From NCBI RefSeq assembly GCF_963921235.1, contig NC_086106.1, positions 95,666,001-95,730,000 on the forward strand: 64,000 bases of DNA, written 5' to 3'. Position 1 is the first letter of the stretch. Each line of letters starts with the position of its first letter. Below the pieces are notes generated by a model that did no database searches, was not told the DNA's origin, and saw nothing but the letters and a program-made list of their open reading frames with translations. This document shows positions 19,725 through 43,835 of the stretch, one piece after another. The position numbers were made by a program, and so were the translations under genes. The stretch comes from Mobula hypostoma (Eukaryota).

Positions 19725-19763
19725 TGGGACTAACTGCAGCTGATTACTCAAACTTGAAAGCAG
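19725..19763 (+). CDS. Candidate in-frame 39-nt cassette exon (VGLTAADYSNLKA)
   Basis: Long U-rich tract ending ttatttcag, donor cag|gtatgg; symmetric phase 1; only the required frame is open. Confidence 0.55.
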
Positions 19764-20065
19764 GTATGGAGTTTTAAACTTATCATAAGTTACACCACTT
19801 ATTTTTAAATGAATGGATCCCAAATCACAGTTTTTGCACGTAGGTAATTGATACAAGGGAACTGTGCAATGTGAATGGTGGTGTAGATGACTGTCTGGTT
19901 TTGTTTCGAACAAAATAAATTTTACTGTTAAAGAGTTGGAACTTGCCATTAGTGATCAGAATTTATACTGCAGTGATCTGCATTTTCAGGCATTTGCTTG
20001 ACCAGTTGAATGCCAAATGTGATTTTTTTCAATCAGTGGTTTTACTGAAATACTGTACTTATCAG

Positions 20066-20193
20066 CCTCTGCAAGCCAAGTTCCTCAGCCACTTATGGGA
20101 ATGAACAGGCCCACTGTGAATACTAATGCACCACCACCTCAAGGTCCACCTGGAAGCCTGGGAAATCAAATGCCAGAAAGCAACATTGGATTG
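20066..20193 (+). CDS. nono: DBHS/NONO penultimate exon: (A)SASQVPQPLMGMNRPTVNTNAPPPQGPPGSLGNQMPESNIGL
   Basis: tacttatcag acceptor, ttg|gtaatg donor, 128 nt, phase 1 to phase 0; Pro/Gly/Met-rich; ends MPESNIGL, compare NONO MPDGTLGL. Confidence 0.85.
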
Positions 20194-20549
20194 GTAATGT
20201 ATTAAACCTATCACAAAATAAATTTAGTATGTATAAAAAGTAGAGCTGTGAACATAAGAAAAGTAAGTGAATTTGAAATTTTAGGAACGTTCTTAATCTT
20301 TCATAAGTTACATTGGAGGTTGGTTGAGATTCAAACTGTTCACACTTGAGTTTGGTAGTGTGGATTTGGTGAATTTCTAACAGTATTAGCAAGACACAGA
20401 GCACTTTGTTCGTATACCCTTGCTAAAAGGAATACTCTTAATTTCGCTTGACCCATGTTTAATGTCACCCGTACCTTTTCCTGTTTTAGGAAAGAATTTC
20501 TTTTGCTTTTCTAGAAAGTTAACCATGCCCTTAATGTAATGTTTTAAAG

Positions 20550-20853
20550 CAGTGGTCCCCAACCTCTGGGCCACAGACCGATACATTGCTGTGAAGAATG
20601 CAGTGGTGCAGCAGTTGTCGGAACACACCCAGCACATCTTTAAGAAAAAGCCGAAATAAGCAAGTCAACTAATTAGGTGCTGCCCGCCACGTAAATGTCG
20701 GCTCAGATCAGAGGCGATTCGCTTGTTAATTAATTAGCTTGTTTATTTCGGCTTTTTTCTTAAAGATGTGCTGAGTGCGTTTCGACTACCGCTGCACCAC
20801 TGCATTCTTCGCGGCAATGTATCGGTCCGCAGCTCGGCGGTTGGGGATCACTG
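20550..20853. mobile_element. hAT (Charlie-like) MITE, almost entirely palindromic
   Basis: Termini cagtggtccccaacc / ggttggggatcactg; 8-bp TSD ttttaaag; inverted arms of about 120 bp. Confidence 0.9.
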
Positions 20854-21477
20854 TTTTAAAGTATTCCTGTAATCGATTGTTGCATGCTTTAAAAAGAAAA
20901 TTATCTGTCTTTGATGTCCCATAGTTTTGCAATATTTCAAAACTATATGCTATTTTTGATTAACTTGATTTGTATAAATTTTCAAATGTCTTATTTTTAC
21001 GTATTACATAGTGACAAATATTCTGGGTTAGGGAAGTGCAGTTATGCAAGAGAAATGGAATTGTAAGAGGTTAAATGTGGTCTAGCTTCTAAGATGCCAG
21101 GGTTTTCCAAATTCAAAGTTTTCACAGGAAACTTTCAGAATCTGAGCTTCATTGTGCAAGGTTTGCATTGAAATGGGTTTTCAACTGATAGGTTATAGTA
21201 ATAAATGTATTGAATGCTGAGAATGATTTTCTTTAAGTGAATTTAATAAAGAATCGTTTCAAGGTAGTGTCAGGAAATACAGCTTCTGCCTTTCTGGTTA
21301 TTTTCTGAAGGGCAAGCTACCATTGAGGAATGCAAGTTCTTTCTAAGGCCTATTTCAATGTTTGTTCAGTAGCAGCTTTTTGTTCCGTTTTAATATTCAG
21401 TAACATTTATGATTGGATAATCAGGCTCCTAACACTTCTCAATTTGCCTCTTTACCTCCATTTGCTTTCTGGAGTAG

Positions 21478-21525
21478 GTCAGGATGAATTATGACGGGTT
21501 CCCTACTGGACCAACGTCTGCATAA
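21478..21525 (+). CDS. Candidate alternative last exon, coding part VRMNYDGFPTGPTSA*
   Basis: Branch-like cctaac, 35-nt pyrimidine tract, GAGTAG acceptor; AATAAA at 21687-21692. Confidence 0.4.
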   Translation, partial: VRMNYDGFPTGPTSA

Positions 21526-24500
21526 CTTTAACACAAGGTTCAGTAAAAGAATGAACTGGGTTTATGTACAGTGCTTGAATGGATAGAATAGTAGAAGAAA
21601 AACTAAAGGGGATAGTTTGAGTGCAGACTTCTGGAAATGCTGATGAGAAGAGGCTTAGTTTAAATGAGTGAAAGTCTATTTCTCAGAATAAAATTCTTCC
21701 TGGAACCATTCTTAAATTGAGTTTTGTGTAGATTTAACTGTTTAAGGCTCCATAGTTACATTGAGAGCAAGTAATATTTAATGTAATCTTTAACATGGAA
21801 ACTGTCACAATAATATTACCTACTATTGCTTGGTTTGTAATTGTCACATTGCTCAATGCAGTTAAAACATTTTCTATGTGCACTCTGTCAACTCTTTTAT
21901 TTTCCTGTATCCATTTTTGTAAAGCTGGCTTTTTAAAATTTGTAGGTTAAACTTAAATAGCCCCCACCAGTGTAGTTACATCATTGGAAGGAGAATGTAA
22001 TTATATTTGTGCTCAGCTGCTTTAGGTATTTTCCATTTTGAATGTGTAAATAGGAATTTATAACGGGAACAGTTATGGGCAGAATATATGAATCTTAAAA
22101 GTGGGGTTGAGCTACCATGAATAACTAATCCCATTTTCACCTGTATTGCACTTGGTTTGTACTCGGCAGTGCTACAGCAGGCTTTCTGTATGATAGATAA
22201 ATAATTGGCAAGCCGATACTAAGCCTCTTAGGTTCTGAAAACATTACTACGTATATTCTGAAATGGAGGATGTGCCGACTATTTACTTATGTACATAGTG
22301 ATTAAAGACAAAGATTCTGTACTGAAATAAAAGGCACTGATGGAACATGAATACTTGTATCACTTTTGATGATGCTGTTATCATACACAACATTTACGTC
22401 ATATGACCCCAACGGTCAGATTTTTTTAAAGAAACTCCACCCTATCTGCCTTGTCACAAAATCACGCAATCTGTAGTTGATACAGAAATTATTAGGCATC
22501 TTTGAGTCCATTTCTACAGTATTAAGGTTATCTTTTGACTTCTGTAATTTATTGGTAGCTTATTGTCAGTTGGAAAGAGTTGTCGTTTTGCTTCCACGAG
22601 CTGTTTACTTAAACAGGATTTTTCAAAGCTGACTACAATGTATGTTTTAAATCAATAATAGGTATAATTGCACTTTGCACAGTAGCTATTTTTTTGGAAA
22701 TGATTTTTCTGTTTTTGAATAGAAACTTTCCTGAACCTATTATCGTATTAGGAGTGCTATTCATAATGAATATATTGGCTCTGGTAAATAATTAAACATT
22801 TATGAAAGAATTTTAAAGTAGAATTATTTGGTATCTTTTGAAATGGATTAATTGGTACAAATTATTATTTTAGGGTAATCATATTTTTCAGGTGAAATGT
22901 CACTATGCAATTAGTTGAGACATCTAGTCATCCTTAAATTGTGACCGAGACAAATTAATGGATTTACAAACTTTGGCATATATGGTGTGGGTGGATGGTT
23001 TGTTTTTAAGTATTATTCAGAGGGTATTCAGTACTATGAAACAACATTTCTGCAAATATTTTGTAAAATACTTTTGAAAATAACTTTGTTTATATGAAAA
23101 AAGATACTTCAGTGAATGAGCTACTGTAATGACACTTTGATACACAGATTCCTCTTGTAGTTACCGGATCAATCCATGTACCAGCAGTGGTTTTTACTAG
23201 TAGGGTTTCTTGTACTTGAGTTTCTGATTTGTATCACCACAAGTTGAATTCCATTAGTTTTTTTTTAGAAAGGTTCAGTTCTTGGGTGGATTATTGAAAT
23301 TCTCTCTGACCTTGTATCACCAGTATTAAAGACACGATTCTTCATATCTTATTACATTAGTATTTTGGATATGCAGTTATATTTTCTAGCAATTTTACAT
23401 ATAATGTCATTTCTCACTGGCAGCCACCATAATTATTCATTGAAATCCACAGCACAAAAATGGGCCAGTGACAACTTCAGAAAAATTTAACTTTATTTTG
23501 CCAAAGTTAAGTACTATTCTGTGTATTTAAAATAATCTTGAGAACCCATACCACTGAAATGATTATTTACCAATGCATTGACTATTATTTGTATTACTAT
23601 AGAGAAATTTTGTGGCAGTTCTGGCTTTGAATTTCTCAGCATTTTATTTCTGGCTAATGAAATACCTCAGAGGCTGCTCATTTATTCTATCTATCATGTG
23701 GTGATCCAGAAGGGCAGTGTATTCATTATGAAGGCATTCTTAATACAACAATTTAATGCTACTGAAGCTTGGTGCCACAGGTAATGATTAGTGCTTTTCT
23801 ATGGATGCATTATTAATGCTTCTGATAGCCATGATATGTCCGAGAGTTATTGATAGATAGCATTTTCAATCTTGTGCTGAACTAGGTAATGATATTTACA
23901 GATAATAACTTTAAAAATCAATACTTATTTCTAGCTTGCAAGGAGTTCAAGCAGTTGACAGAGATTTTTGAAATTTGAATCTGACTATAGGCTTGATAGG
24001 GGAATATTGAAGTTTCCTGGCTACTCTGGAAAATAAATAAACTGCGACTTAATTTGTCGACTCTCGTAATGAGATGGGATAGTAAACTAGAAAGATGAAA
24101 AATAACGATTCAACAGTTTGTATGTATTGAATGCCAGTGAACATTTTGCCAGCCAAATTTGTTGGCATGCCAAATACCAAATGGGATGGGTACATTAAGT
24201 GGGTTTCATTGCTGTCCCCTTGAAGTGATTCTGTTTGTTCCCCATTATTACTGATGAAATATCTTTCATCTACTTAATTCTTAACATAATGGTACAGTTG
24301 CACTATTATGGAAGACATTTGACATGATTTTGTTAATCTCTTTGCCATTTAATATTTCTGGTTCTGTAGTTACTGAGTTGATAGTTCCTTGGACATTCTT
24401 GTTGGTTTAAAGCATGAGTAGACTTGGGGAAAATGTCAGGAGAGTTGTATGGAGATGTTCTACTTGAACTTCAGACCAGGATTGATAACAAATGATTGAT

Positions 24501-26175
24501 ATTTTTCTGCTTGTTCATGTCATTTTTCTTTTGTTTCACTTATAATGGTAACTTACAAAGCTTGCATTTAGGAGTATCATTTTGTCCTGATGACTGACTG
24601 ACTCACACACAAACGTGCTTTCTCGTGTGCGCCCCGTCGTGCTCTCTCAAACACTTGCGCTCTCACAAACATGGAAGCATCATTCATAAAAATAACGATT
24701 TCAGTTGCCCTTTAACTGGTTGATTATGGGAACATTCTGAATTTCTTTTGACAGTAGACTTTTAAAATCTGATTTAAAAAAAAATAGGTTGCAACATGTG
24801 CTGCAATATACTTCTGAACAAAATCATTGTGAGATAATGTTTAAAAGGTGAAAAGAAGACAAACCATTGATACCACTGCTTACTTTTTTGGGCAGGGTTG
24901 TTAAAGTGAGCTGGCATCTCTGCCCACTCCCACCCAGTACCACTACTTCCCTCCGGAGTGACTGTGACGTCTGGGATTCAAGATTTTGTACTGTCATTGG
25001 TTTTATGTTTTTGCACATTTCTTGCTGACATGCCTTTCGCTGTTTGGATAATGAATTTGAAGGAAAGTTGTGACCTACTGCAGATATTGAATCTCATGGT
25101 GGTTTTAGTTCCCTTTTTTATGGATGTCCCTTTCTCTTTACCTGATTGTTCCCCATTCTCTCACTGTTTACTATAGTAGAGGCATTAAGAATAAGATTTT
25201 TAATTTTTAAGATAAATTCTCTTTTTTTGTTTTAATTGACACTAAAAATATCCCTTATTGCTATTGCAGTGAAGCTTTCAGACATAATAGATTTAGAAAA
25301 AGATGGGGCTCTAACTAAGAGCTAGGAGGTGAAATCATTGTTAAATAAAGAAAGTTTGGAATACCTCATATGACAGTTTTAATGGGAGGCATGGTAGATT
25401 TTCTCTTGGTGGAATTGGTAAATATCTTTAAACTAACTTGTACTGCTGCATTTCATATTTATTTGTTTCAATTTATCTTTAGGATAGTTACTTTGATAAT
25501 TTGCTTTGAGCGCCAGTTTAGTGTTTTGCTTTCACCAATTGTTCACTTCTGTTAAGATGCTAATACTGAATTTTGTCACAATAATCATGAGCCTTTCTTG
25601 GCTCGTTTTTTGAGAACTGAGGCTTTCCAGCCAAGCACAGGTCTTTTGAACATGCTTGTAAAGGGAGTGGTGACATGCTAATTAAGTGACCTGTTAACTA
25701 CACAAATCAGAAGTAGAATCTGAAGCTGATTAGTGTGTTGGCAACTATTTCAAATCAAAAATTGCTCAAGCTTTTATGTGGTCATTATCAGAATATTTTC
25801 GACGCATGTACCATTCTGTATAAAAGATAACGGTGACTATTTAGTGTTTGTGTGTTGGCCTACAATTGTTGATATGTTTGGAAGTGTAATCGGCTTGCTT
25901 ATTTTCCCTTTTCTATTTTGAACATCTGTATTTTGTCAGTTTAGTAAGTGCTGTGTACAGACAGCAAGTGAAAGGTTCTGAAATGTTTCCCGAAATTTGT
26001 TATTATCTTGTAAGTCTAATGCAATTACCCCTTTCCCTTTTTTTATCGGTACTTCTGGACCCTGCTGACTTGCATCGTTTCGTTGGGGGATTCTCAACCT
26101 GCCTAATGTTAAATCTACGTCGGACTTGCAATGAACGATAATGTCCAAACCTACGTATTTTATCTAAATAAATAG

Positions 26176-26313
26176 CCTAATGATCGATTTGTTCCTGGAA
26201 ATATGGATGGTCAAGCAAATAACATGGGTGGACCGATGGTTGGGAGCCCGGCTGGGTTTCCCCGTGGAAATCAAGTTGGAGAGTTTGGTGCAAATAAACG
26301 CCGTAGATACTAA
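26176..26313 (+). CDS. nono: DBHS/NONO terminal coding exon: PNDRFVPGNMDGQANNMGGPMVGSPAGFPRGNQVGEFGANKRRRY*
   Basis: In frame with the preceding exon; ends in the NONO/PSPC1 NLS NKRRRY followed by TAA. Confidence 0.93.
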   Translation, partial: PNDRFVPGNMDGQANNMGGPMVGSPAGFPRGNQVGEFGANKRRRY

Positions 26314-27165
26314 ATACAGACCTGAAAATATCCAGTAGCCTTTAGCCATTCCACTTATTGCCTCAAGTTTTTTTGCAGATTGTATCAGTTGTAATGAGCT
26401 TTAGTACATAAGGTCTTTTTGGTATTTTACTGTTTCAAATATTATTTTAACTTCCTGTTGGATGTATTTAGTGAATGTGCATGATATGTTTCAGTAATCT
26501 AAAATGTACATAATGTAATGCACAAGTTGCAGAGAATTTGGACAAAAAGTCTCTCTGAGATGTTACTATTTTGATATTTGTTTAGCTACTCTAGTACCAT
26601 CTTCAATGAAACAGTCTTCTGGAACGATTTTGTCTTTTGTGATTTTTGTTTTTTTAAGTGATTTCAGACAGTAAAATTGGAATCTCAAATGGCCTATGTG
26701 TTTTTATTTTGTATTGCTGTAGGCTTTTTGTTGATATGCTTGGTATTTTAAATATAGATGGGGATTGGGATGAGGAAATGTAGGCAATAGGTGGGTTTGC
26801 ATTTGAGTTTGGTGGAATGGGCTTAAGCTTTTTTGACATGAAATAGATAAGAATTGAGGTTCATTGATCATATCATGCTGTGTTGGCCTTTTAAGGATAT
26901 TGTGTATTCTGGTTTTGGTAGTTCAAAAGCTCAATATTTCTAACTACTGACAATATTTAACAGGAATAACTTGTATTTGTGGGATGGGGGCATTAGAATT
27001 AAAATTCATCGGGTCTCTGGAACATATACCTGGCTTGCAGGAAAATAAATCAAATATAAACCCACCTTTTTGAACTTGATACCCTCGAGCTTGTTCACGG
27101 ATGCTTGGTATACGTTGCAATACACGCTTTAAGGTGCAAATAAAGTTCTCGGCAATCTTTCCTGT
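26314..27165 (+). other. Probable 3'UTR of the canonical isoform
   Basis: U-rich and repeat-free, between the stop codon and the AATAAA signals. Confidence 0.6.
27139..27144 (+). terminator. Polyadenylation signal AATAAA (a second one at 27044-27049)
   Basis: Followed by a GU/U-rich downstream element (tgtattgtaatgt...ttttttt). Confidence 0.6.
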
Positions 27166-28703
27166 ATTGTAATGTATTCATTTACGCCCTGATTTTTTTT
27201 CCTGTTAATATTTAAAGTTATTCAGTTCATTACTGAGCGGTATTTTTATTCCATACTTCGAGAAGTTTTTTATCTTTGACTTTAATTATTCTTCACTTTT
27301 TACTGAACTGAGAGAGTTGGTAGGAATATATTAAGATTCTTTTGTGTATAGGTGAAACCAGACTTTTTGCTTTGGAAGTTGGCACATAAAGGGAAAAAAT
27401 TAAGCAGGTGTTCTATTCAGAAAATGCCTGTAATTTTGTAAATGGTCAGAATTTTTATCTGTTTCCCAAACCTAAATATGACTCATCAGAGGAAGCTGAC
27501 AGGTTAGTCTATCCAACACTAAATTGTTCAATTTGTAAATGGTTTGCCAGTTAACGAATATTGTTTTATTCCCTTTGCTCTTCACACATTTGATAACTTG
27601 TAAATCTGTTGCCCTGCTTACAGTTTAGTGGATGTAGTTTAATACCATAAGATAGGCTGGTTGGCCCATTGAGCCTGCTCCACCATTCAGGTGGGTTACC
27701 GAAATTGTATATGGTAGGAAAAATAATGGGATCAGAGAAAGAAATGTTTCATGAAATATTTTAAAACTGCCAAATCAGTTTTTATTCAAAATAAAAATAA
27801 TGATACCAGTAAGATAGAAAGCTAATCATTCAATAATAGCTGAATGGAAGAACGTGTGGATTCAGAAACAGGCTCACTCCATACTTACTCTTCATACGTC
27901 TTTCCCTCAAGTTTTTTTGCAATGATTTCCTACAGTCAATAGTTACTTCCCTTTTCACAACTTCTGTACTAGAAATGATCAGGTAGAATGTAGTTTGATA
28001 GTTAGCCATTGATTCCATTTTTTCAACCATTACTGATCAAACTTTTTATGTGCTTCAGTTAGTTTGTAAGCTGATGTCAAGGCGATCTGTCCACAGTCCA
28101 GTCAGCAAACATCTCCCAAGTAGTTTTAACTGTCGATTGTATCCATAAATACATAAACAATTAAAGTTTGCTTGCAGAAATTTTTTTTTATTATATATTG
28201 TTTCAAAGGCATTGTTTCCCTACTTTATTCATTACGAAGGTTTGGAGCATTCCCAGCTAACTTTTCTTCAGCTTATTCCCCAGTGCTTCTGTGCTTTCCC
28301 AATGGTTTTATGAAAGTTATAAATTAAATGCTTTTATAGCTTAATTAGTTATTTTTTCCATCCTGATACTGATTCTGTTTATGTTACTTCATATGCTTCT
28401 ATTTAGTCATGATACTATAATCTGATATTTTTGTCCACATACAATTGATGGAAATCATTCTGAGGAATCATGATTTTTTTTTTAAAAACACTGGCTGCAC
28501 ATTTGTACTTGATATGTGATGATATTGTAGTTCTTCTTTCATAATTTCAAATATGAAAAGTAATCTAAAGATGATGCTTGTCACAGATCAATGTGGTCTG
28601 CATGTGCTAATACTACGTGAAACCAAATCGTAAGTAAAAATTATGCTATGAGATTATGCACATTCTCTACAAAGCTAATAAGCCAGCTATCTATAATACC
28701 ATA

Positions 28704-30830: not shown

Positions 30831-32249
30831 TGCCTTATATGCCTAACTTTGCTCACCAACTTTAATTTTTAATTCTAGTAACATTTCCAGACTTGAGCTG
30901 GGTTGTTTCTGGAAAAAAGTTATACTGTGATGTCTGTGGTGCTTGCATTCATTCATGGTATCTGTGAACACCATCAGGTATTTGTCTCCACCTTCCATTA
31001 ATCATGTTTGCCGCATGCAAATTTTGTTTCTGGATATAGGAATGGATTTTTCTAATGCTACTTCAGAATGTCTGTTTTTCTTTAGATACTTAGATTCTTT
31101 ATGGATCTGTTCATTTTTCATTAATACACTTGTGTTATGGATTGTAGCATATCTACTGTTACAGGAGTTTGTCCGTAATCATTATGCATGTCAGCTGATG
31201 TGAAGAAGCGATTGTGTATCGCCAGCAACTTGTGATTTTTAAAAAAAATTGGCTTACCCATGAATTCCTGGGTTAAAGGTAATGTATACGTTCAGATCAG
31301 GGTATGCATCTGTGATACTTGCTCTGATCAGATTTTTAATCTATTGACAAGGGAAATAATTACTTTATACTCCCAAGAAATTGAGTAGAACAAATTGGGG
31401 GAGAGTCTGCAAATGTCCACAGCACATTTCCACTGCGAACAAATGCAGTAAACAAAAAGGCCAAGTTCAATGAGAAATGGAATCTGAACAAATAATGACT
31501 GCAATGAAACTGTTGAGAAGTAGGGAGTGTTAAAGTGTGTTTGACTATGAGTAGCTGCCTTCATGGTGAAAGTTTTATTAGCACAATTAGAGATTAAAAC
31601 TGGAATTGAAAGAATCGTAAACTGGTTTAAATGTGTGGAAAAGAGAAGTGAGAAATGAAATTAAACTGCTAAATGAGAACCAAATCTACACAAATATTCA
31701 GGAATTTTTCGTACTTAAAAGACAGCTGAAATTAATCAAGTTGTCTGTTAGCAGCATAGTGGAGATATATTTTTGCACTAGGTAGTGAAGTTATCAATAC
31801 TGGATAAACAACACCTGAAAAAGATTGCTTTGGAAGTGCTTTTTAATTTGGTGAGAGATGCTTTCAAAACAAAAAACACAAGTAGGTCGGAACATCTTGG
31901 GCAAGAACAAAAATGAAAATGTGACTAAACTGTTTATTTGCTTCATTGAAAATTGGGTTTGATACTTGGTGAAAAATGTCATGGAGATAATTAGATAGAT
32001 CCCTGAGCTCCAGTACTCAGGTTTAACAATGCAATTGTCTGGCATTCCATGCCAGTGTATTCTATTTGACTATCCAAACAAAAACATCTGTAAAATCCAG
32101 AATATATGTAACATTAAGTTCCTAGTAGTTATACCTCTAACCGTGTTGTTCCTCAGAAAATAAGAGTTATTTTCACCTTTACCTTAGTGTTTCTTGTCAT
32201 GAGTCTTTTTCTTCTGCACTTAATTTATTCAGGCTAAATTTGTTTATTT

Positions 32250-33925
32250 CAGTGGTTTAATCAGGGAAAAGAAGGAAACATATGTCAAGTGTTGGAAGCA
32301 ACAGGAATTCTGCAGATGCTGGAAATAGTTGGTATTGATCAAATCACTTGAAATTCATGGGGGTAAAGGAGAAAACTCAAGAAATTACTTGGTGAGTGGG
32401 ATTTAGCAGATTCCGAAAACATTAAGTGGATTAGAAACAAGTGATGGCTAAGGAAGTAAAAAGTCCTTGGGGATCAGGAGGTAATTTATACATAGAAATT
32501 AGGAACCTGAGTGAGCTACTAAATGAATACTTCTCATTACGTGAAGGCTAAAGGGAAAAGGCAAGGGTACAGTAATATTCATCAGCCCATAGCTATCAGC
32601 AAGGAAGAAATACTAGAAATAACGAAGCAGATTAGGGTGGATAATCCCCACAGCTTCATGGATTTGTCGCAGGATGCAACAGGAAGCAAGAGAGGAGTTT
32701 ACTGGGGCTCTAGGGACTTGTACCACTGACAGTCATGGGTGAAGTGTCTGAAGACTCGATAGCTAATGTTTTCTTATTCAAAAATGGCAGTCGGGATGAG
32801 CGTTGAAACTATAGGTTGGTGGCCCATCCACCGGTGATAGGGAAATTGTTGAAGGTTCTAAGAGACAGGATTTATGTTGACTTAAAAAGGCAGTGAAGGA
32901 TTAAAAGTTGGTTTTGTGCTGCAAAGATCATTGGGGATCTTTTTTTGATAAGGCAGAGTGAACATGGCTTACATGGACTAATCACTTTTGACAATGTCCT
33001 GAATTGTAAGCTGGTTCAGAAAAATTGAGGCAAACTGAATCCAAAGTTGACTTGCTTTTAAGAGGCAGATGGTAGTGTTGGGAGGGTTGTTTTTTGACTG
33101 GAAATATGTAACAATTTGTCTACTACCGTGACCTGTGCTGAGACATTTGTAATGTATACAGATATTTGTAGGTGGTCTAGTTAGGAAATATGAAATTGAT
33201 ATTCTTAGATAAGATGGAACAGCTGGACAGTTGGGAGGACCAATGGCAGCTAATGTTTTACACAGATGAGTTAATGCACTTTTGGGATCTTGGGTAGGAC
33301 ATATAAAGTAAATGGCATTGCTCCCTGTAACCGGTAACAGGGGTTGATAGGGTAGGAAAAATGCTTGAATTTGGAGGTTAAGGCATTGAGTGTAAGAGTT
33401 GAGACCTCATTGTCGTCGTAGAAAACACTGCTTAGACTGCATTTGGAGTAATGTGTACAGTAATGCCCACGGGAAGGATTTAGTGGCAATAGGGAAAGTG
33501 CAGAAGAAATTAACCAAGGTGTTGCCTGGAATGAAGGCTGTAAAATCGAGAGGTTGGATAGGTTGGGTGTATCCTGACTGGAGCATAAGGAGATATGGTT
33601 TGATGGAAGTTTTTATTGAGGGGCGAGACAGTATAGATGGTTAGAATCATCTGAGGGCAGGAGAATTGAAAACAGTACGGCACAGGTTAAGAAAATTGAA
33701 TTGTAGGATATCTGAGTAGGTTTTCCATAAGAGGATGGTGAATATTTAGTTTGAACTGCTAGATGAGGTAGTGGGGCAGATATAATTATGTTTGAAAGTT
33801 GTCAATATTTTGGCAAGTTGTTGACTGATAGGTCTAATGCAGGTAAGTGGGCTAAGCTTAAATGGGCATCACGGATGACATGGATGAGGTGGGCCTACAG
33901 GACCGTTTTCTGTATGGTACATTCC
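32250..33925 (+). mobile_element. Old CR1 LINE ORF2 remnant
   Basis: KEEILE...IRVDNP, KVQKKLTKVLPGM and a CR1-like tail. Confidence 0.75.
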
Positions 33926-36900
33926 TGCGATTCTTTGGAAATCGGTTCAACTTTCCACTTCTTTGACCAGTTGTACAACTCTCAGTTGGTTTTGCAGTTT
34001 GCAAAACACTACCTAATGAATTATTGTGTGGAGGACTGTTTTCTTCATTCTTTCTGATTTCCTACTTTAGATTCCAGACTGATGTTCACCCCACTGGTCG
34101 TGAAGCGTTTATGACTTGGGAAGATTCATAATTGGTATAATCTGAATACTGCTTCTGTGTCAAGTTTTTGTTGCAATTTTAAAATGTGTTGGGGAGAATG
34201 TGTTTAACCAGAAAATTTCAGTTTGAAGAAAACAGCTTCAAGAAAATGGCAATTAAGCAAAAGAAGTTTACAGATATGTATGTAGTTTTCATTCAAAATA
34301 CTGCATGTTTATTCAATGACCAAGGTTTAATGGATTTTTTTTTGGGAAGAAGTTAGAAAAATAAACTGATTTTTGTTTATACAGCCAAATATGATTTCTC
34401 TTTATTTGTAATTTATTTGCCTTTTTTTCCTACCTCTAGTTTACCATGTATGCCAGACTAAATTTGATCTGACTGAATTGCCAGTTTTCAGATGCTGGAT
34501 AAATTGCTAAACCTTGGAAGCCACTGTAGACAGTGGAAAATTATCCCTGTCATCAAGTACTCCAGAACGGTCTCGGCTGAAATGAAATTGTAAATAAATT
34601 AAACGTGAATAGTCCTTGTTTATCTTATTGTCAACTTTATCAAACAACTTGAATCTCCAAAAGAAAGTTCAGATTGATAGAGAAATAAAATTCATATAAA
34701 AATAAATAAAATTTAAAAATTGAGCATGCAGATTTACAAACACTAAAATCCGACAGAACCAATTGAAAGAGTTTGATAAAATACTTGAAATGCAACAAAA
34801 CTTAACATATTGAATTTGCTATAACTTGCTGACGAGTCCCTTTTGCAGGAATGTAAACTTGTATGCTTTTGGAAGAATATTAGACACCACATTTTTAAGC
34901 AATCTATATGGGGGTGGGGACTTAATCTGCCCACTGATTCTGCAGTCTACTGCCTGCACATGGCTGTATATTGATTTTCTTGGATCTCAGAATTTTCATG
35001 CAGGATTATTTCAACTGTTTTGATATGCTGATGTTCCTGTTTCTGGTGGAACAACTTCCAAAAACAACTAATTTCAGCATATTTTCTTTTTGCAGATTGA
35101 GTGTTGAGTACACTTCAGAAATGATTGCTAATGGAAAGGAATGGAGTTTTTGCATTTATTCGTTAAGTTATAAAGAGCCATAACTAAACCATTTGTGAAT
35201 CCACTGAGGCATCTATATTTTTGCACTGTATAAAAAGATTTACTTTGAGATCATCAATTTTTCAGAGGTTTATGTTACTAGCACGCAACAAGCACATGCT
35301 TAATGTAAGGCTGTCAGCTGTGTTTGGTCCTCGTTTGAAATTTTGTAGTTTTGTTAAGTTTTTCCTTAATTTATACTTAATGTTATTTTGTCGAACATTT
35401 GTTATTAATTGTAGTCATTTTTCTTTTGTCAACTCTAATGCCTGTAAGTGCAAGGGTTATTGGTTGAAACTCACTGCAAACACAAGCATTAAAGATATTC
35501 CAGTGCAGCATAATCACTATACTGTACTGTCAAAAACTAAGGCTATAATGCAGTGCTGAAAGTACCATGTTTTGGTTGAGATATTAAATTCAACAATTAC
35601 TGAATTTAAAAAGTAAATTTACAAGAGTTGCCCCCTTTGTCACCAAACCAGTTTATAATTATCATTATCACTTTGCTATTAATGAGATGTTTGTTCAAAT
35701 TTCTTAAGGAATACTGAATGCATGCCACTTTTAAGTGCTCTGTGGTCGTAGAACATGAAAGGTACTGCAGGCCGTCTCTGGGTTATGAATGGATTCCATT
35801 TTTATGTCTGTGGGTTGATTTTGCTCATAGTCAGAAAATAATGCAAAATCACTCTGCTCACCATAGCTCTATATTATTATAATGAATGATATTGTTGAGG
35901 GCTAGTTATCATGAACTTCTATTTTCTACCCCTGCCTCATTGCAGTTGTACAGAATCAGTATTTTCCCAGTTTCACAGCCGCTTCTGAGGGGCTTTAAGC
36001 TTCTGTGGATTTCACATTGTTTGAGTATCATTGCACAAGTACTACTAAAAACAATTGCTTGTCAATTTCCAGACCAGCTCTCAAATGTACCATGGTGAAA
36101 CTAGCAGCCTGTATTCTTGAGGCAATGATCTCTGATTACTGCAGATAGGTTACATGTAAACAGACTTTTTTAAGACTTGCGTTTGTTTGGTTCTAATTTG
36201 AATTTATTGTTTATAGGTGCTTGCTCGCATGTACCAGTATCCGTAAGTCAGGTGTGTGTAATCAGGGAGAGAATTTATATAAATATGTCTCATGTATACT
36301 TGAGTATCTTCTTAAACTATTTGGCATCTCCTTCAGTTTTTTTTAGACAGTCCCTTAGGCCCAAGAATCTGCTCTGACCATCAGGCAGCTACTTACACCA
36401 GTCACAATTTTTAATTTTCCCCATTTTCTACGTAACTGCTCTGATTCTACCTCTGTACACAAGGGGCAATTAGCAGTGTCAACTCATATCTCTGGGAAGG
36501 AACCAGAGGAATTTGTAAATTGCACGCAAAACTGGAGATCAGGATTGAAGATGTGATGCAGCAGTTCTGCTAGTTGCACCATTATATTTGTATTCTTCAT
36601 TTCCATTGTGCATGTCTAACATTTGGTTTTATAAGTGCCAAGATCATGTTATTGTACACACATGGTCAGCAGGGTTCTGGGTATTCAGTAATTTCTCTAC
36701 TTCACATTGTTGCCTTTTGGAAACCTTTTGCAAGTTGTAAATAATGAAGCAAAAAGCTACTACCATTTCTCTGCCCCTTTTATGAATGTTGGTTTTTGAC
36801 CCGTAAGTGGAATATATTTAAAAATTAATATTCTAGTGAGCAATGGAGTGATGGCATTCAACAATATAAAACAATAAAACTGGTTTTCCACTCTCAGTTT

Positions 36901-39900
36901 CGTACACCGGTTTGTTCTTGGAGCTTGAGGACTGCTTTATTATTAGGTGTAAGTGGTGAACATGTTCTTCCTGTTTATAATCTATAATAATTGCAAAACT
37001 ATTTTGCATATTTTAGTTTTCATTTAAAAAAGGAACATTTTAGTATATTAAGCTGTGTGCAATTATGCACAAATGTAATGAGCAGTGTATCAGCTAGCAT
37101 TTGGTAAGAGAAGTTAACATTTCAGAATGATTAATTTGGCAAAAGCTGCTCAAAGTTAAATCAATATGAATTTTTGACATTTTTTCTTTCTCCACAGATA
37201 CTGCCTGGCTTTGCATTTCTATTTTTACTTAAGTTTAATATTTTGGTTTCTTTTAGAGTATTTGGTATGTATTATTGAGTACTAGTACTAAACTGAAGTG
37301 TTGACATTCCAGAGTTTATTCTCATAGTTGGTAGACTTTATCCATCCTATACTTTAAACAATAAATATAACTCAAATTTCCTGTTTGTAACAGATTATCA
37401 TAATTCTTAATACTAGTGAAGACAGATGGAATTATGAATTCATCCAAGTGTCAATTTCAAACTTTAATCTGCAAGCCGTGAGTGTCCATAGCCCCACTCT
37501 GAATTTTGTGCTGTTTACTCAGCTGGGTACTTCCATCATATGGTTGACTGTTCAGCACATGAGACCCACCCTGAGTTTGGGACTAACTGCTGGCTCATTG
37601 GAAAATACTAAATCACGGAATGTGTAAGGTTGTTATTGTTAATGCACAAATCTTTCTGCTCTTTTCTTGTTCAAAGAAAAAGTGAATCATAATGCTTTTA
37701 CAACAATATTTTTCCGATTTTTAAAAATAGCATTATCAGCCTTATGACGATGTCTTGTCATAGGATATGGAAAAGTACGTTGTGAAAGACAAAAGCATAA
37801 TCTTGTACAGAACATATTGATCAGTGAATTTCCTGGCTGCCAGTGGAAGTGGCTAGAGGTAAACCAGAGTATATGCGTCTAAAGAAAATGGCAATATTTT
37901 CTGTTTGTGTTGACAGTGTGTTTCACAATAAATAGAAGTTTTAAGCAAATAGTAAAGTGTTTAACTGTACTGAACACAGCAATGAATTCAAAAACTTCCA
38001 TATTTCATTTCTGCAATGCAAACTTTTCATCTTTAAAAGTTCATTGTAAATACCATCAGTTTGCAATTGTCTTTCTATGTCTTAAACTAGGGTCCTGAGT
38101 GTTCTCGTCGGTTATAAATATTACTTGACGAAAAGTATACCATTCTAAATCTGTTCAAAAATTTGTATTTCACTGTAAATGTATCTTGGATGGAGACAGA
38201 GTTTCAAACTTGTAGAAGGTGCTAGCTGATATAGATGGAATCCCTTTTTCCTTCCACTGTACATGAGTTCTTTTGGAGTTATTTTGTCTTCATGTATACT
38301 GTGTGTAATTGGCTTTAACTGACTTTAGTCTTTATGTTACATATTGCTTATAGTACATCCTGTGACCTGTATGTCTTGTTATTGAGGCCTGCTTGTGAAG
38401 ATTCTTGTCTTGCATACTGCACTTTCCACTTAAGGGTAGAACTGTATATTAAATGCTCTCTGTCCTGCTTATTGCACTTGGCTTTCACCTGTGCATAACA
38501 ATGTTTATTCTGGATTCTTTCTAAAATATTAGCATACACGTTTAAGTTAATTTTACCATTCTTTTTAATTGGTCTGGGTTGTTATCAGTATGTCATTTGA
38601 TTCTGAGTTGAGTAATGAATGTGCAATCTTGGGTTTGAGCTTTTGTGAATTTGATTCACTATGGTTTGGTCACTCATATTTTCTTCCTGATACTTCCCCC
38701 AACTGTTCTCTTCCATTTAGAACCTCCTTTAAAAAAAAAGGTGCTTTTGCCCATCTATTGTCTCATTCTTTGGAGTCTATTTATTTTGGCAAGCTATCTG
38801 TGATGTATGGTTACTTTTATAAAACTTTTGAAATGTGAATAAATTTTTAATATTTGCTATTTTAATCTTTGGCGTACATTTGCGCCATTAAGTCCTTCAC
38901 CATTTGTTTTTCTCATTTCTATTAGTTTATTTTCTGGTTATTTGTATGTGGTTTACAGTTAGAAGAGGAGAAGCTCGTTCCTTACTGCAGCTGGCAGAAG
39001 ATGGAATTTGTAATGGTTGGTAATTAAGACTAGGTACAAAATGTATTAAATTCATTTCAAGACTCTTAGCAAGGTGAGTTTTCATTACATGACTACATTT
39101 TTAGCATTGAGATATTCTGATACTCCATTATTTCAATAGTGTTTTTGTAACTGATTTTTCTTTTGCTACTGAATTATTAATTGACTTCAATCTGTCTTGG
39201 CCCAAATCTCGCTTTTCTGCATTCCACACAACATTGTATTTTTTCTCCAGTTACTCAGCTTGAATGCTTTCTAATTCAGTACTGAGGTGGTGCATGTTCA
39301 TGGAAGCTATTAATACTGAAGTGCTGTGTAATGACAAAACAAAGTAAATCCACGTTCCAGGAATATTTTTGTTTTTGCAATGTAACTTGTTATTTCAGGC
39401 CTTGAATGAGAAGCAAAATGGAAAAAGCAAAGAAAATGAAGGGATAATGGGATGTTTTGCATCTGAAACATCAATATTCCAAAAATTTATTTTGCTTAAT
39501 GCTCTAATCTCTAACAAGTACTAAAACAACTTTAAATGTTTTTTTGCAACTTATTTGGATTTTTTTTTGCCTTCACAACACTAAGTCATTGGACAGGCAA
39601 CAAAAGTAGCAAAATTTTTGCAAGAATTTCATTATATATAAAAATATTGCAAAAATACTTGTATTCCATCCATGATTTGATAGCTTGAAGAGTAAAGTGA
39701 ATTTGTGCGTTACTGTGTTCATGTACCTGATTGTCAGATTTCATGACAAGTCAGGGCAAGAAAGAACTTGACTTGTTAATGGGCTGTTGCCTCTTTTTCT
39801 TAATTGGGCCTGAAACCGAGTGGTTTGCTAAGTCATTTTAAACTAGAGGCAGATGAAGACAATTGAATTTGTTGTGTCTCAAGTTGCATACAAATCTGAC

Positions 39901-42900
39901 AAGGTGAGGAAAGCGAATTTTCTTCTCTTAAGTACATTGACTAACCAGATTGTTATTAACAACAATAACGCTTGACTGGTTTTGTGGTTAACAAAATGAT
40001 ACTTCTTTAAAATTTCAGATTTTCTGAAATTCTCCCATTGTGGGGCTCAAACATTTGTGAATCACTAATCCAGTTATGTGCCAACCAAATCTTAAAAACA
40101 ATATAAACAGAAAGGAGATGGCAGTTATTTGAATTGTAATATATTCAGGAAATTACAAAGAAAATGGGATTGAATTCTCGTAGAAAAGGTCTGTGGTGTT
40201 GTAAGCATTTTCTACTAGTTCCCTCCCATTCCCTCTGTAACATGGTTTGTAGTTTTAAATTTACACAAAGAATAAGAAAAAAAATAATGATTTTACTTGC
40301 ATTTAAAATGAATGACCTACATAAAAGTGCAGCTTACGTACTTCCCTGTAAACTTTACTCTGTAGACATGCTCTCTTGTATAAAAATTTTATGTTGCATC
40401 TTTAAACAGCAAAGATGAGTATTTTGCACTTCAGATAGAAACTTTATTTTGCCCTTTTATCTTTGCAATGTGCACTTCTGATCAAGAGATCATTTTCCCT
40501 TTGTTCTGATGTTTTAAAACAAATGGTTACACTGAGGTATATAAAATGAAAATTACATTACATAGATGCAATATACATTAATACTAGAATCCCTGAGTGA
40601 TAATTATGAAATAAAAAGTGCTTTAATTCTGTTAAAAGTATTTTTCATTCAGATTAGCCACCAATTGTTAAAAGTCCTTTGATCTTAATGGAAATGATTG
40701 TGATACATAATTTTTGGGGAAATCAAGGTTATTTTAGTGAAATGAACCTACTGTTGTTACACCAGAATATATTTTTTAAAAGTCACTCATGAACGGTTGG
40801 ATTTCTTTGGGGCTTCTATTCATCATTTTCTTCCATTTCTTTTTTTTGTTTCACCTCCCACATTCGATGTATTGCTTATTTTTCTTCTGCTAAAATAAGA
40901 CCCTTATTTATCCATTCAAGAATGAATCAAATATTTGAATTGTCTTTTATTTTCAAAGAGGAGTGCTCAGAACTGGTTTTGATGAAGGATAGCTAAAGCA
41001 GCTCAATCACTTGAATTGATATGAAATCAAATTTGAGCTTTTACTTAAGAAGATATGACAAGTTGATATGGGGACAACATTTTTGGTTATTGTGCTTGAA
41101 CTGTTTGTATTTTAAGTGGAGAGTATGGAATTTGGTTGTTGAATTCTATTTTTTTGCTAATAGTCTTCAACCAATTGAGTTTCTTCGCATTGTATTATGG
41201 AAACAAATTATTTCCTTGTTCAATTTTTCCCCCCACTTTCCTCTTTGTTTCTCTTATGCAGTCACCCCAACATGGACTCATACTTTCAGAGATCATATGT
41301 TTGGAATCCTTGAATTCCTTCACTCTCAGTTTTGCAAAATCAGATTTGTAGCCTAATGGCATTCTAATCAATAAGAATAAGTAAATTAGTCACTAATAAA
41401 CAATTTGTCTAAATCTGTCAAAATATTCCATGTTCAACACCCTGTCAATCCTGAGCAGTTCCAATAATTTCCAGATTGTATTTGTTGCATATCATCTTGC
41501 TGATGTACCAAAGTTCAATCTAATCTCAATAGCTTTTGAAACATCCATTCCCAGTCTTCATGGCTTATCACCGTCATACTGATAATGATTGTTTGTCTGT
41601 GGCTGAGTTTCAGTCCCGATAAGTGCTGCCTGCAGTGCTAAACCTCCTCTTGGTCCATCTGTCATCATTAATGAGAAGTAGCTGCAAGTATTATACTAGT
41701 GCTTGAGCAACGGCTGCTATTCTGCTACTGCAGCAGAATTGGGCCATATGATTTTTTTGGTGTTGTAAGTAGTAGAAAGTAATTCATTTTTAGAGCAATA
41801 TTAAACATATGCTTTAGTATTTGAGTTTCTGACTTTTGGAGTAGATGTTAAAGCAAAGTGTCTCAGTTGGGTATCAAAGATCCCTTAATGTGTTGATCAA
41901 TATTTACAGTATCCTTTATGCTTTCTCTATTGTCCCTGCCAGACACTGAATTGTGGTAAAAATCCAATTAATTACAATTGCAGCCGCATAATGTGCTAAT
42001 CTGTTTTACTGTATCCTGCCTTTAAAAATAAAATTAAAGGATTAGGTAATGATTAGCACCAGACATTTGTGATATTCTCCCTTTTGATTAAGGTGTTAAA
42101 TTAATTGATGTCTATTTGTAAAAGATCGATGATAGAACCGAAACAATTTTTCTGAATATTTTGGCCCATATTTGTCATTACATAAAAACAGATTTGATTT
42201 ATCTTGCTCATCATGGCACATTACTGGTCCAATTCAGCTACTTCCTTATTTGCCATTCTCGCAATAACTATGAAAATAATGAGCTGACAAACGTTCTGGG
42301 CAATCCTGGTGCACAAGAGGCATTCTAAACCTTTGGTTCTGATTATTTCATGCTCCTGGGAAGCCGGGATAAAATGGAGATTGGTATTATGTGACAGAAA
42401 TAAAGTTGAACTAGTTAAAATACCATGTAATTAAAAAAATCATTCATACCATGTTACTGTGGTATATCACATAACACCTGTAGAGCAGCATAATTTTGAG
42501 CTGCATTTAATTATTTTTTGTACTTTTAATTATGTTTATTTAAAGCATTTTTTGGGTGCTGATTTCTTGTATGTGCATTCAACTCGACCATATTTTTTAG
42601 AAAATGTGAAGTATGTAGGGCATATGGAATTTAAAATTCAAATAAACGAATTTTGGGAGTCTCACGATAACTTGACTGATTTTTTTTTGTTCAGCTGATG
42701 TAACTAATGTTGGATGGCTTGGGTGGAAACTGTTAAGAGTTCATAGTTTAAGGTAGGAATGAATATGTGTCCGGTTTCAGGATTTGCTATTAATACCACT
42801 TTAATTGATTGGCCTGTGCTGAATAATCAGAGGATGAAATCACAGGGAGCAAGGAACACTGCTATGCCATGCTGTAAATTTTATTTGCTTATAAGTTGAA

Positions 42901-43835
42901 GATTACCCTGCAAGTTAAGGCAAAGGAGGCATAGTCTGTTTTACACAAAAGTTGAAGATTTACAATTACAGTGTAAAGGAAGCAGAAGGTGATAACGAGT
43001 CATCTGATTTCTGTTATAGTTATTTAGCGTTATTTAACTGTGAGAGTGAATGAATGCATCTTAGTTTAGTGAAAGAATAATACATTGCACATTACTGTCC
43101 TTGAAAATTTCATGATAGTGTATTATCTGTAACCATGTAATTGCAGACTTGTTGATACAGGAAGAATACCATACTATAATTCTTGTTTCCATTATATTTA
43201 TTATGTTGCAATATGTATTGATTGAGGTTTTTTTTAAAGTAGGGAGATAGTAATTTTAAATTCTTTCAAAAGTAGTCATATTTCATGAGTGGGGTTGTCT
43301 GCACTTGCAGCCTTTTCACCAAATTTAACTATTCTGGATTTGCGTAGCCTATCACACTGCCACAGATCATCCCTGAGCCAAATGGTAAGGTGCTTAGTTG
43401 CAGTAGGCTGTGTAGGTTCTGATGGTGAAGATGGATGAATATAAAACTCAAGCCTGACTGTAAAACTCAAATGAAAATATTCAACTGACCATAAAGCCCT
43501 GTCCCACTTTTGCTATTTATCAAACATGTACATCGAAAATATGACATTCCTTATTCTTCCCTTTCATCTCCACAGCCCTATGATCCCTGTTCAGATGAAT
43601 GGAGACGAGTTCTAACTAAGAATGCATTTGCCATTGTAAGTACTGGAGAATCTTTGGAAGTTCTTGCTTCTCCAATGGACTTAATGAGTAGTCCATTGAC
43701 AGACTACAGCCAGGACATTGATAGCAGAGCTTGACCAGAAAGTCTGAGACCTGTTCTAACGTGTGTGTGACCTATAATATACCAGCACATATGCCAAACT
43801 ATTAGCATAATCTGTACCAATAACACTACAATGTA

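What the first reader, a model, noticed from the sequence alone, without database searches (positions are those of the whole stretch)
19725..43635. Candidate alternative 3'-end / NMD regulatory module of the DBHS (NONO) gene
Seen: a weak acceptor on the NLS-encoding last exon, a stronger intronic acceptor at 21478, and several well-formed short exons 5-17 kb past the stop codon, all in DNA almost free of transposons. Known: the paralogs SFPQ and PSPC1 make isoforms with alternative C-termini (PSF-F, PSP1-beta), and RNA-binding protein genes often use conserved unproductive splicing. Inference: the donor at 20193 chooses among nuclear full-length, NLS-less and NMD-destined products. This could be an ancestral DBHS feedback switch that I do not know to be described for NONO.
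Basis: partly seen in the sequence, partly recalled or inferred. Interest (0 to 1): 0.8.

Follow-up and report, generated by a model that had tools for sequence, protein, structure and literature searches.

The report
NONO gene 3' end, transcribed tail
The short "exons" listed downstream of this shark-type NONO gene look like chance splice-site matches inside a long RNA that runs unspliced at least 17 kb past the stop codon. The gene's last exon, which carries the nuclear localisation signal (NLS), does have an unusual splice acceptor of the kind seen at regulated exons.

Summary
The window holds the last exons of a NONO-type DBHS gene on the + strand: 2850-2958, 8282-8336, 20066-20193 and the terminal exon 26176-26313, which ends NKRRRY-stop.

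**Not more than chance**
- Exon-like acceptor/donor pairs in 26.3-44 kb are as frequent on the opposite strand and in shuffled sequence.
- 29 AGs in the last intron score at least as well as acceptor 21478.

**RNA-like contigs**
- Contig sets of two species hold 33.7-43.7 kb almost completely.
- One 11.3-kb contig lies colinear over 38.8-43.6 kb. By its length it should reach back to about 32.3 kb.
- Contigs run straight through the laid acceptors 38959, 42695 and 43576, and by inference through 34440 and 36217.
- In two of three runs, one per species, contigs stop on the GT of the predicted donor at 43635.

**More than chance**
- The terminal-exon acceptor follows a 160-nt AG-free zone, the longest in the window. 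A branch-like CTAAT and a strong pyrimidine tract head this zone, which is the distant-branch-point pattern.
- Donor 20193 is weak.

**Verdict**
- The listed short exons are unsupported.
- A regulated last intron and a long 3' transcribed extension are likely.
- An SFPQ-like switch stays possible but untested.

The parts
2850..2958 (+). Coding exon of the coiled-coil tail (QEEERRRREEE...MMRRQQEGFRGNFEN), ends in phase 0
   Evidence: Read from sequence. Best solved-structure match is NONO chain 9glc_BD residues 345-376, E 1.7e-4, followed by SFPQ chains.
8282..8336 (+). Coding exon (RENMRMEEMAQRTGMAMP-G), donor CAG|GTGAGA
   Evidence: Donor scores 11.3 bits.
19725..19763 (+). Candidate 39-nt in-frame cassette exon (VGLTAADYSNLKA); expression not tested
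   Evidence: Sequence. Acceptor 6.0 and donor 8.9 bits. Reading frame worked out by hand. Also noted as s1-144624.
20066..20193 (+). Penultimate coding exon (...NQMPESNIGL) with weak donor TTG|GTAATG
   Evidence: Donor scores 3.2 bits against 6.3-11.3 for the other donors.
20531..20872 (.). Roughly 340-nt foldback (MITE-like) element in the last intron, 340 nt after the donor
   Evidence: Inverted arms of 119 nt, 83% complementary. CpG observed/expected 0.95.
21478..21715 (+). Predicted intronic alternative last exon (VRMNYDGFPTGPTSA-stop, AATAAA near 21689); not distinctive, expression not tested
   Evidence: 29 AGs in the intron score as well or better, and 14 of them have a stop plus poly(A) signal within 400 nt.
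26015..26173 (+). AG-free zone upstream of the terminal exon. CTAAT branch-like motif at about 26016, pyrimidine tract 26027-26047, G5 tract at about 26074.
   Evidence: Longest of 4,197 AG-to-AG gaps in the window, 159-160 nt against 121 for the next. CpG observed/expected 0.71-0.84 against a window median of 0.23. No stable fold, z +1.0.
26176..26313 (+). Terminal coding exon (PNDRF...GANKRRRY-stop) carrying the C-terminal basic NLS motif; the 3' UTR continues to at least 27400
   Evidence: The stretch 26176-27400 is held whole by four RNA-like runs of organism A and at 0.48-0.79 by six other organisms.
32297..43637 (+). Long colinear (unspliced) RNA. Strand inferred from T>A and G>C skew and from the GTAAGT at its end.
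   Evidence: X27 contig of 11,341 nt, depth 16.6, no differences, laid on 38800-43637; the start at about 32297 is inferred from its length. X3, X27 and X1 hold 0.95-0.99 of the words of 33700-43699, and organism B RNA-like runs hold 0.12-0.25 against 0.55 for its DNA. Skews.
31165..31278 (+). Predicted short exon; not covered by the laid stretch, chance-level motif pair
34440..36243 (+). Span holding predicted acceptors 34440 and 36217; by inference the 11.3-kb contig runs through both
   Evidence: Colinearity upstream of 38800 is inferred from the contig length and the 0.99 word share.
38959..39073 (+). Predicted short exon; contigs run through both of its ends, and it is uncovered in organism B RNA
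   Evidence: tables 2 and 8.
42695..42752 (+). Predicted short exon; contigs run through it, and it is uncovered in organism B RNA while its flanks are covered
   Evidence: tables 2 and 8.
43576..43635 (+). Predicted 60-nt exon. No sign that the acceptor is used. Donor ATT|GTAAGT is probably used, because contigs of two species end on its GT.
   Evidence: X27 contig ends at 43637, X8 at 43636, X3 runs through. Only two GTAAGT occur in 5,045 unique nt. Acceptor scores 13.7 bits, with 78 nt AG-free upstream.
43845..44799 (.). Tc1-like transposon copy with internal deletions, bounding the unique stretch
   Evidence: Depth in the hundreds to thousands in all four runs. Loose-end consensus CAGTGCCTTGAA and FQQDNDPKHT-type coding letters.

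Best explanation
The window carries the 3' part of a NONO-type DBHS gene.

**Last intron (20194-26175).**
- It pairs a weak donor with a distant-branch-point acceptor. A branch-like CTAAT and a strong pyrimidine tract sit about 155 nt upstream of the AG, followed by an AG-free, CpG-rich spacer with a G tract.
- This is the architecture of regulated or slowly removed introns.
- I infer that removal of this intron is the regulated step.
- If the intron stays in, the reading frame ends after GL-VMY, giving a protein without the last 45 residues and the KRRRY signal.

**Downstream of the stop codon.**
- Transcription does not end at the proximal poly(A) signals.
- RNA-like contigs of two species cover 33.7-43.7 kb.
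- One contig is colinear with the DNA over the laid 38.8-43.6 kb, and by its length probably from about 32.3 kb.
- This is most likely a sense-strand read-through or long 3' extension of the gene.

**The listed short exons.**
- They are chance splice-site matches inside this unspliced RNA.
- The exception is the 5' splice site at 43635, which is probably used with an unknown partner further downstream.

**Shown versus inferred.**
- Shown: the gene model, the AG-free zone, the chance-level motif counts, the colinear contigs and where they end.
- Inferred: that the small contig sets are RNA, the strand of the long RNA, its continuity with the gene across 27.4-32.3 kb, and any regulation.
For: - **Gene model:**
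- **Weak donor and low-scoring acceptor:**
- **AG-free zone:** 160 nt, the longest of 4,197 in 64 kb, headed by CTAAT and a 21-nt pyrimidine tract. High CpG retention there.
- **Literature on long AG-free zones:** they mark distant branch points and go with alternative splicing (PMC1431707). [quoted passage not shown]
- **Chance level of exon-like pairs:**
- **RNA-like runs:** contig sets of 143-241 Mb, against 2.7-2.8 Gb for the DNA runs, hold 0.95-0.99 of 33700-43699. Runs of a second species hold up to 0.25 against a DNA maximum of 0.55.
- **Colinear contigs:** they run through 38959, 39073, 42695, 42752 and 43576 and end at 43636/43637.
- **GTAAGT count:** two in the unique stretch.
- **Sense-strand signature:** T>A skew of +0.09 to +0.14 from the last intron to 43.6 kb.
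- **No other gene or promoter:** no CpG island at 27-64 kb. No Pfam domain in 97 open segments at 26.3-46 kb.
Against: - The runs are only guessed to be RNA, and contigs give neither strand nor abundance.
- Continuity between the 3' UTR (to 27.4 kb) and the long contig (from about 32.3 kb) was not examined.
- Nothing was laid on the last intron, so retention and junctions from 20193 are untested.
- Contigs drop rare variants, so low-level spliced isoforms may exist.
- The contig end at 43635 shows that the downstream RNA is not wholly unspliced, and one run (X3) reads through that site.
- Gene identity (NONO rather than PSPC1) rests on short C-terminal pieces.
Confidence: 0.5

Rival explanations
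1. As in SFPQ, donor 20193 can skip the NLS exon and splice to distal exons in the transcribed 3' region, including the 60-nt exon 43576-43635, which is in frame and open. This would give NLS-less or NMD-sensitive isoforms that are too rare or too unstable to survive contig assembly.
For: - SFPQ does this: its exon 9 donor goes either to terminal exon 10 or to distal exons, and the alternative form is NMD-sensitive and lacks the NLS.
- Transcription extends over the region in two species.
- Contigs end on donor 43635.
- Acceptor 43576 is the best-scoring in the region, at 13.7 bits with 78 nt AG-free upstream.
- The terminal acceptor is of the regulated kind.
Against: - No contig breaks at any listed acceptor in three RNA-like runs.
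- 38959-39073 and 42695-42752 are uncovered in organism B while their flanks are covered.
- The motif pairs are at chance level.
- No short protein fragment containing exon C, whatever its tail, is on record.
- The downstream DNA diverges faster between species A and B (about 1.9%) than the proximal 3' UTR (about 1.1%), as derived from word shares.
Confidence: 0.13
2. The RNA over 32-44 kb is an independent transcript unrelated to NONO regulation. It could be a long non-coding RNA with a very long exon ending at donor 43635, or intron RNA of a neighbouring gene whose exons lie outside the window or were not recognised.
For: - The 11.3-kb gapless contig is among the longest in its run, where the maximum is 17.8 kb.
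- The contig ends at a consensus donor, as an exon would.
- The stretch is free of intra-window repeats.
- Transposon fragments at 28.6-30.6 kb could supply a promoter.
- Continuity with the NONO 3' UTR was not shown.
Against: - No CpG island or other promoter sign at 27-64 kb.
- No coding signal.
- No Rfam family.
- The sense-strand skew runs on without a break from the NONO last intron.
Confidence: 0.27
3. Nothing downstream is transcribed. The 'RNA?' runs contain DNA, or are another kind of library, and the coverage is an artefact.
For: The tool marks the kind as a guess and warns that DNA can be present.
Against: - The contig sets are only 5-9% of the genome-size DNA sets, yet they hold 95-99% of this 10-kb stretch at depth 10-17.
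- Coverage falls with run size, and this is seen in two species and two studies.
- The longest records, at 15-20 kb, fit transcriptome assemblies.
Confidence: 0.05

Closest known systems
SFPQ alternative distal 3' exons (altSFPQ) and intron-9 retention
   Same: It is a DBHS paralog. The last 45 residues, including the NLS, are encoded by the terminal exon. The penultimate donor is the decision point. Transcription continues past the canonical terminal exon. The alternative product lacks the NLS, and the gene autoregulates through NMD (10.1101/464404; PMC12372870).
   Different: Here no junction from the penultimate donor to any distal exon was seen. The distal RNA is colinear with the DNA. Only one downstream donor shows a sign of use. 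NMD and self-binding were not tested.
PSPC1 alpha/beta isoforms and Chironomus Hrp65 isoforms
   Same: DBHS genes whose isoforms differ in the C-terminus through alternative 3' exons. NLS-less forms are imported by dimerising with NLS-bearing forms (Kiesler 2003, cited in PMC12372870). The PSPC1 isoforms are from my own knowledge.
   Different: No alternative C-terminal transcript was observed for this gene.
Distant-branch-point exons with long AG exclusion zones (Gooding et al. 2006, PMC1431707)
   Same: An AG-free zone of 160 nt with a branch-like motif and a pyrimidine tract at its upstream end. This class is enriched in alternatively spliced exons.
   Different: The branch point is not mapped here, and alternative use of the exon has not been shown.
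Downstream-of-gene (read-through) transcripts
   Same: Long, largely unspliced RNA that probably continues from an expressed gene for more than 10 kb past its poly(A) site (reviewed in PMC12564374; 10.1101/2020.06.30.178103).
   Different: Continuity with the gene was not shown. It is present in several samples of two species without known stress, and it ends at a consensus donor.

Membership tests
DBHS protein gene, NONO type | C-terminal coiled-coil extension with the ...EERRRREEE...MMRRQQEGF motif | tested here: met
   The exon 2850-2958 peptide matches NONO chain 9glc_BD residues 345-376 (E 1.7e-4), then SFPQ chains.
DBHS protein gene, NONO type | C-terminal basic NLS (NKRRRY-stop) on the last exon | tested here: met
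   Read from sequence. From memory, PSPC1 ends the same way, so this does not separate NONO from PSPC1.
DBHS protein gene, NONO type | Two RRMs, a NOPS domain, and orthology to NONO rather than PSPC1 | not testable with these tools
   These exons lie upstream of the window. No full-length relative could be fetched. Segment lengths and the GL| exon end fit NONO, but that comparison is from memory.
SFPQ-type alternative distal 3' end coupled to NMD | Penultimate donor splices to exons beyond the canonical terminal exon | tested here: inconclusive
Contigs run through the laid acceptors 38959, 42695 and 43576, and by inference through 34440 and 36217. Rare forms cannot be excluded.
SFPQ-type alternative distal 3' end coupled to NMD | Transcription continues past the canonical terminal exon on the sense strand | tested here: met
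   RNA-like contigs cover 33.7-43.7 kb in two species. The sense strand is inferred from the skew and the GTAAGT contig end.
SFPQ-type alternative distal 3' end coupled to NMD | Distal exon conserved above its flanks | tested here: inconclusive
   Organism K DNA is 90-92% alike over 38.8-43.2 kb and 93.7% alike over 43232-43676. This is too coarse to decide.
SFPQ-type alternative distal 3' end coupled to NMD | The isoform rises on NMD inhibition, and the protein binds its own pre-mRNA | not testable with these tools
   Needs experiments.
Distant-branch-point 3' splice site | AG exclusion zone far longer than the usual 40 nt or less | tested here: met
   160 nt, the longest of 4,197 gaps in the window.
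Distant-branch-point 3' splice site | Branch consensus and pyrimidine tract at the upstream end of the zone | tested here: met
   CTAAT at about 26016, then acccctttccctttttttatc at 26027-26047.
Distant-branch-point 3' splice site | Mapped branch point; alternative use of the exon | not tested
Read-through (downstream-of-gene) transcript | Continuous with the upstream gene's 3' end, more than 5 kb long, largely unspliced | tested here: inconclusive
   Length and colinearity are met. The stretch 27.4-32.3 kb was not examined.

The most novel reading that the evidence does not exclude
In cartilaginous fish the NONO-type gene keeps an SFPQ-like 3' switch.
- A DBHS-sensitive distant-branch-point acceptor decides whether the NLS exon is spliced in.
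- When it is not, the transcript runs on for 17 kb or more and is spliced from 43635 (possibly via exon 43576-43635) to further exons.
- This would give NLS-less or NMD-sensitive products.
- It would make alternative 3' ends an ancestral autoregulatory feature of the whole DBHS family, later lost or compacted in mammalian NONO.
Probability: 0.13. Interest if true: 0.7.

Novelty: new member of a known kind. Interest (0 to 1): 0.4.

Why it matters
DBHS proteins buffer each other's levels. Loss of NONO raises PSPC1 and SFPQ (PMC13648420). SFPQ is known to control itself through an alternative distal 3' end that removes its NLS. My two literature searches turned up no such control described for NONO.

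If an early-branching vertebrate NONO has a regulated terminal intron and a transcribed distal region, the switch would predate the split of the three paralogs. That would give a concrete place to look in mammalian NONO.

As it stands, the result mainly warns that sequence-only 'well-formed exons' in AT-rich DNA are chance. It replaces them with two measurable features: the 160-nt AG-free zone and the long downstream RNA with a donor at 43635.

Tried and rejected
- **The search for homologous proteins, exon C and the terminal exon.** No candidates. Full-length relatives cannot be reached because of the length rule. So no orthologous loci could be fetched and no cross-species alignment of the splice sites was made.
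- **The look-up of encoding contigs, ORF 41021-41353.** Not on record.
- **Protein atlas and solved structures, terminal-exon peptide.** Nothing.
- **Rfam and ARAGORN, whole window.** Nothing. This argues against an RNase P/tRNA-like 3' end at 43637.
- **Fold of the AG-free zone.** No stable structure, z +1.0.
- **Pfam on 97 open segments, 26.3-46 kb.** No coding gene or transposase or reverse-transcriptase domain.
- **CpG-island scan.** No promoter-like island downstream.
- **U1-type motifs, 30.6-43.6 kb.** 18 on + against 6 on -, but about half of this excess is expected from the G+T skew, so it is not counted as evidence.
- **Minus-strand start site at 43637.** Considered as the cause of the contig ends and rejected as less likely. 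The ends fall on one of only two GTAAGT in 5 kb, and the skew points to the + strand.
- **Poly(A) site at 43637.** Rejected. There is no signal hexamer and no A-run on the contig.
Full report
**What is in the window**

The + strand carries the 3' part of a DBHS gene.
- Exon 2850-2958 encodes QEEERRRREEEILLRQREKEEMMRRQQEGFRGNFEN. Its best solved-structure match is NONO (9glc_BD residues 345-376), ahead of SFPQ chains.
- Exon 8282-8336 follows.
- Exon 20066-20193 ends ...MPESNIGL.
- The terminal exon 26176-26313 reads PNDRF...GANKRRRY-stop.
- A 39-nt in-frame candidate cassette lies at 19725-19763.
- The RRM and NOPS exons are upstream of the window.
- The NONO label fits the segment lengths and motifs. 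From memory, PSPC1 also ends NKRRRY, so orthology is not proven.

**Check of the observation**

- *Downstream exons.* In 26.3-44 kb I counted distinct acceptors that have a donor 25-250 nt downstream, at three thresholds. The counts are 43/17/6 on the + strand, 41/12/1 on the - strand and 49/15/4 in Markov shuffles. The 'well-formed short exons' are therefore what chance gives.
- *Acceptor 21478.* In the last intron 29 AGs score at least as well, and 14 of them are also followed by an in-frame stop and a poly(A) hexamer within 400 nt.
- *Coding potential.* No Pfam domain was found in 97 open segments of 26.3-46 kb.
- *Promoter signs.* There is no CpG island downstream of the gene.
- *Transposon content.* 20-28 kb and 34-46 kb share no repeats with the rest of the window. 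Repeats and transposon-like ORFs lie at 28.6-30.6 kb, and a repeat motif shared with about 9.0 kb lies near 32.3 kb. A Tc1-like element starts at about 43845.

**What is more than chance**
- The acceptor of the NLS exon (aaataaatag|CC) ranks 186th of 328 AGs in its intron.
- It is preceded by a 160-nt stretch without AG (26015-26173), the longest of 4,197 such gaps in the 64-kb window. The next longest is 121 nt and the mean is 13 nt.
- At the upstream end of this stretch lie a CTAAT branch-like motif and the tract acccctttccctttttttatc. The spacer holds a G5 run.
- The spacer keeps CpG at 0.71-0.84 of expectation, against a window median of 0.23.
- This is the pattern of distant-branch-point exons, a class enriched in alternative splicing (PMC1431707). 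[quoted passage not shown]
- The partner donor TTG|GTAATG is the weakest of the gene's donors in the window.
- If the intron stays in, the frame reads GL-VMY-stop, so the protein loses its NLS.
- The spacer shows no stable fold.

**Sequencing-run evidence**
- *Proximal 3' UTR.* The stretch 26176-27400 is held whole by four small contig sets of organism A, and at 0.48-0.79 of sampled words by six other organisms.
- *Downstream 10 kb.* For 33700-43699, the genome-size sets of organism A (2.7-2.8 Gb) hold 1.00. The small sets of the same species (143-241 Mb, marked 'RNA?') hold 0.99, 0.99, 0.95 and 0.66.
- *Second species.* DNA of organism B holds 0.55, which corresponds to about 1.9% divergence. 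Its small sets hold 0.25, 0.16 and 0.12.
- *Why these are taken as RNA.* Sets that are 5-9% of genome size cannot hold 95-99% of a random 10 kb unless the stretch is enriched. I therefore take them as RNA and the stretch as transcribed in two species.

**The one read-laying run** (38800-44799; X27 and X3 from organism A, X8 from organism B, X34 as organism K DNA)
- In X27 a single contig of 11,341 nt, depth 16.6, lies colinear on 38800-43637 without a difference. By its length it should start near 32297, at the repeat motif mentioned above.
- X3 covers the stretch with two contigs.
- X8 covers it in pieces.
- No contig breaks, and no joint is listed, at 38959, 39073, 42695, 42752 or 43576. The joints shown all lie in the Tc1-like element, and 104 further joints were not displayed.
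- In X8 the bins holding 38959-39073 and 42695-42752 are empty while neighbouring bins are covered. That is the opposite of what exons would show.
- By inference from the contig length and the 0.99 word share, 34440 and 36217 are also run through.

**One unexpected result**
- The X27 contig ends at 43637 and an X8 contig ends at 43636, with no loose letters.
- Only two GTAAGT occur in the 5,045 unique bases laid, so a chance hit has a probability of about 0.1%.
- Both runs lack 43638-43856. X3 reads through to 43852.
- Window-identical contigs resume at 43857 at similar depth.
- I read this as a 5' splice site used in part of the RNA, with an unknown partner. The tool warns that holes prove nothing (note).
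- There is no poly(A) hexamer, tRNA-like element or Rfam family there.

**Strand and origin of the long RNA**
- T>A skew on the + strand is +0.106 in the last intron, +0.141 in the proximal 3' UTR, +0.112 at 34-38.8 kb and +0.087 at 38.8-43.6 kb. It is near zero or negative in the Tc1 element and beyond 50 kb.
- G>C skew is mostly positive too.
- This is the signature of sense-strand transcription and it continues from the gene without a break.
- Together with the GTAAGT end and the lack of a promoter-like island, it favours a read-through or long 3' extension of the NONO-type gene.
- An independent long RNA remains a serious rival, because 27.4-32.3 kb was not examined.

**Comparison with what is known**
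Its exon 9 donor goes either to terminal exon 10 (45 residues with the NLS) or to distal exons. The alternative form is NMD-sensitive, lacks the NLS and takes part in autoregulation. Its first distal exon is well conserved (10.1101/464404; PMC12372870).
- Loss of NONO raises PSPC1 and SFPQ (PMC13648420).
- The two literature searches brought up no such switch described for NONO.
- Of the features that define the SFPQ-type module, only downstream sense transcription is met here. Distal splicing from the penultimate donor is unshown, conservation is undecided, and NMD and self-binding are untestable with these tools.

**Verdict**
- The listed short exons and the 21478 exon are not supported and are at chance level.
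- The terminal intron has a real and unusual regulatory-type acceptor.
- The region downstream is transcribed as a long, mostly unspliced RNA in two species, with one probable donor at 43635.

Noticed in passing
window 20531-20872: Near-palindromic foldback of about 340 nt (119-nt arms, 83% complementary) in the last intron, 340 nt after donor 20193. CpG observed/expected is 0.95, so it is probably a young MITE. As a long hairpin in the pre-mRNA it could affect splicing of that intron.
   Followed up: partly
window 19725-19763: 39-nt in-frame candidate cassette exon (VGLTAADYSNLKA). Its splice sites score better than those of the flanking constitutive exons. Expression was not tested.
   Followed up: partly
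window 60357-62340, - strand: LINE with long open frames: a 476-aa reverse transcriptase (RVT_1, E 1.5e-35) and a 205-aa endonuclease part (Exo_endo_phos_2). It looks young.
   Followed up: partly
window 26176-27400: The terminal exon plus proximal 3' UTR is held at 0.48-0.79 of 31-letter words by small contig sets of six other organisms. This means about 1-2% divergence, so the 3' UTR is well kept among related species. Between species A and B it diverges about 1.1%, against about 1.9% for 33.7-43.7 kb.
   Followed up: partly
window 43638-43856: Stretch of 219 nt with no contig in two of three RNA-like runs (two species), although both flanks are covered at equal depth. Unexplained.
   Followed up: partly
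window 30600-43637: U1-type 5' splice-site hexamers number 18 on the + strand and 6 on the - strand. Poly(A) hexamers number 25 against 38. In the gene's introns and at 45.5-64 kb the two strands are equal. Part of the excess follows from the G+T skew.
   Followed up: partly
window 14751-15750: CpG-rich patch (observed/expected 0.57-0.76) in the intron between 8336 and 20066. It has a minus-strand ORF containing [17 protein letters not shown], which from memory resembles Harbinger/HARBI1-type transposase N-termini. Pfam found nothing.
   Followed up: partly
window 3810-4073; about 17900-18300; 43845-44800: Tc1/Tc3-type transposon fragments. HTH_Tnp_Tc3_2 matches at 3810-4073. The copy at 43845 has very high depth in all runs.
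   Followed up: partly
window 50762: Strong acceptor-like site ttgacttactcag|GTGCG whose exon would start with GT. That would fit a contig ending two letters past 43635. It is a lead only.
   Followed up: no
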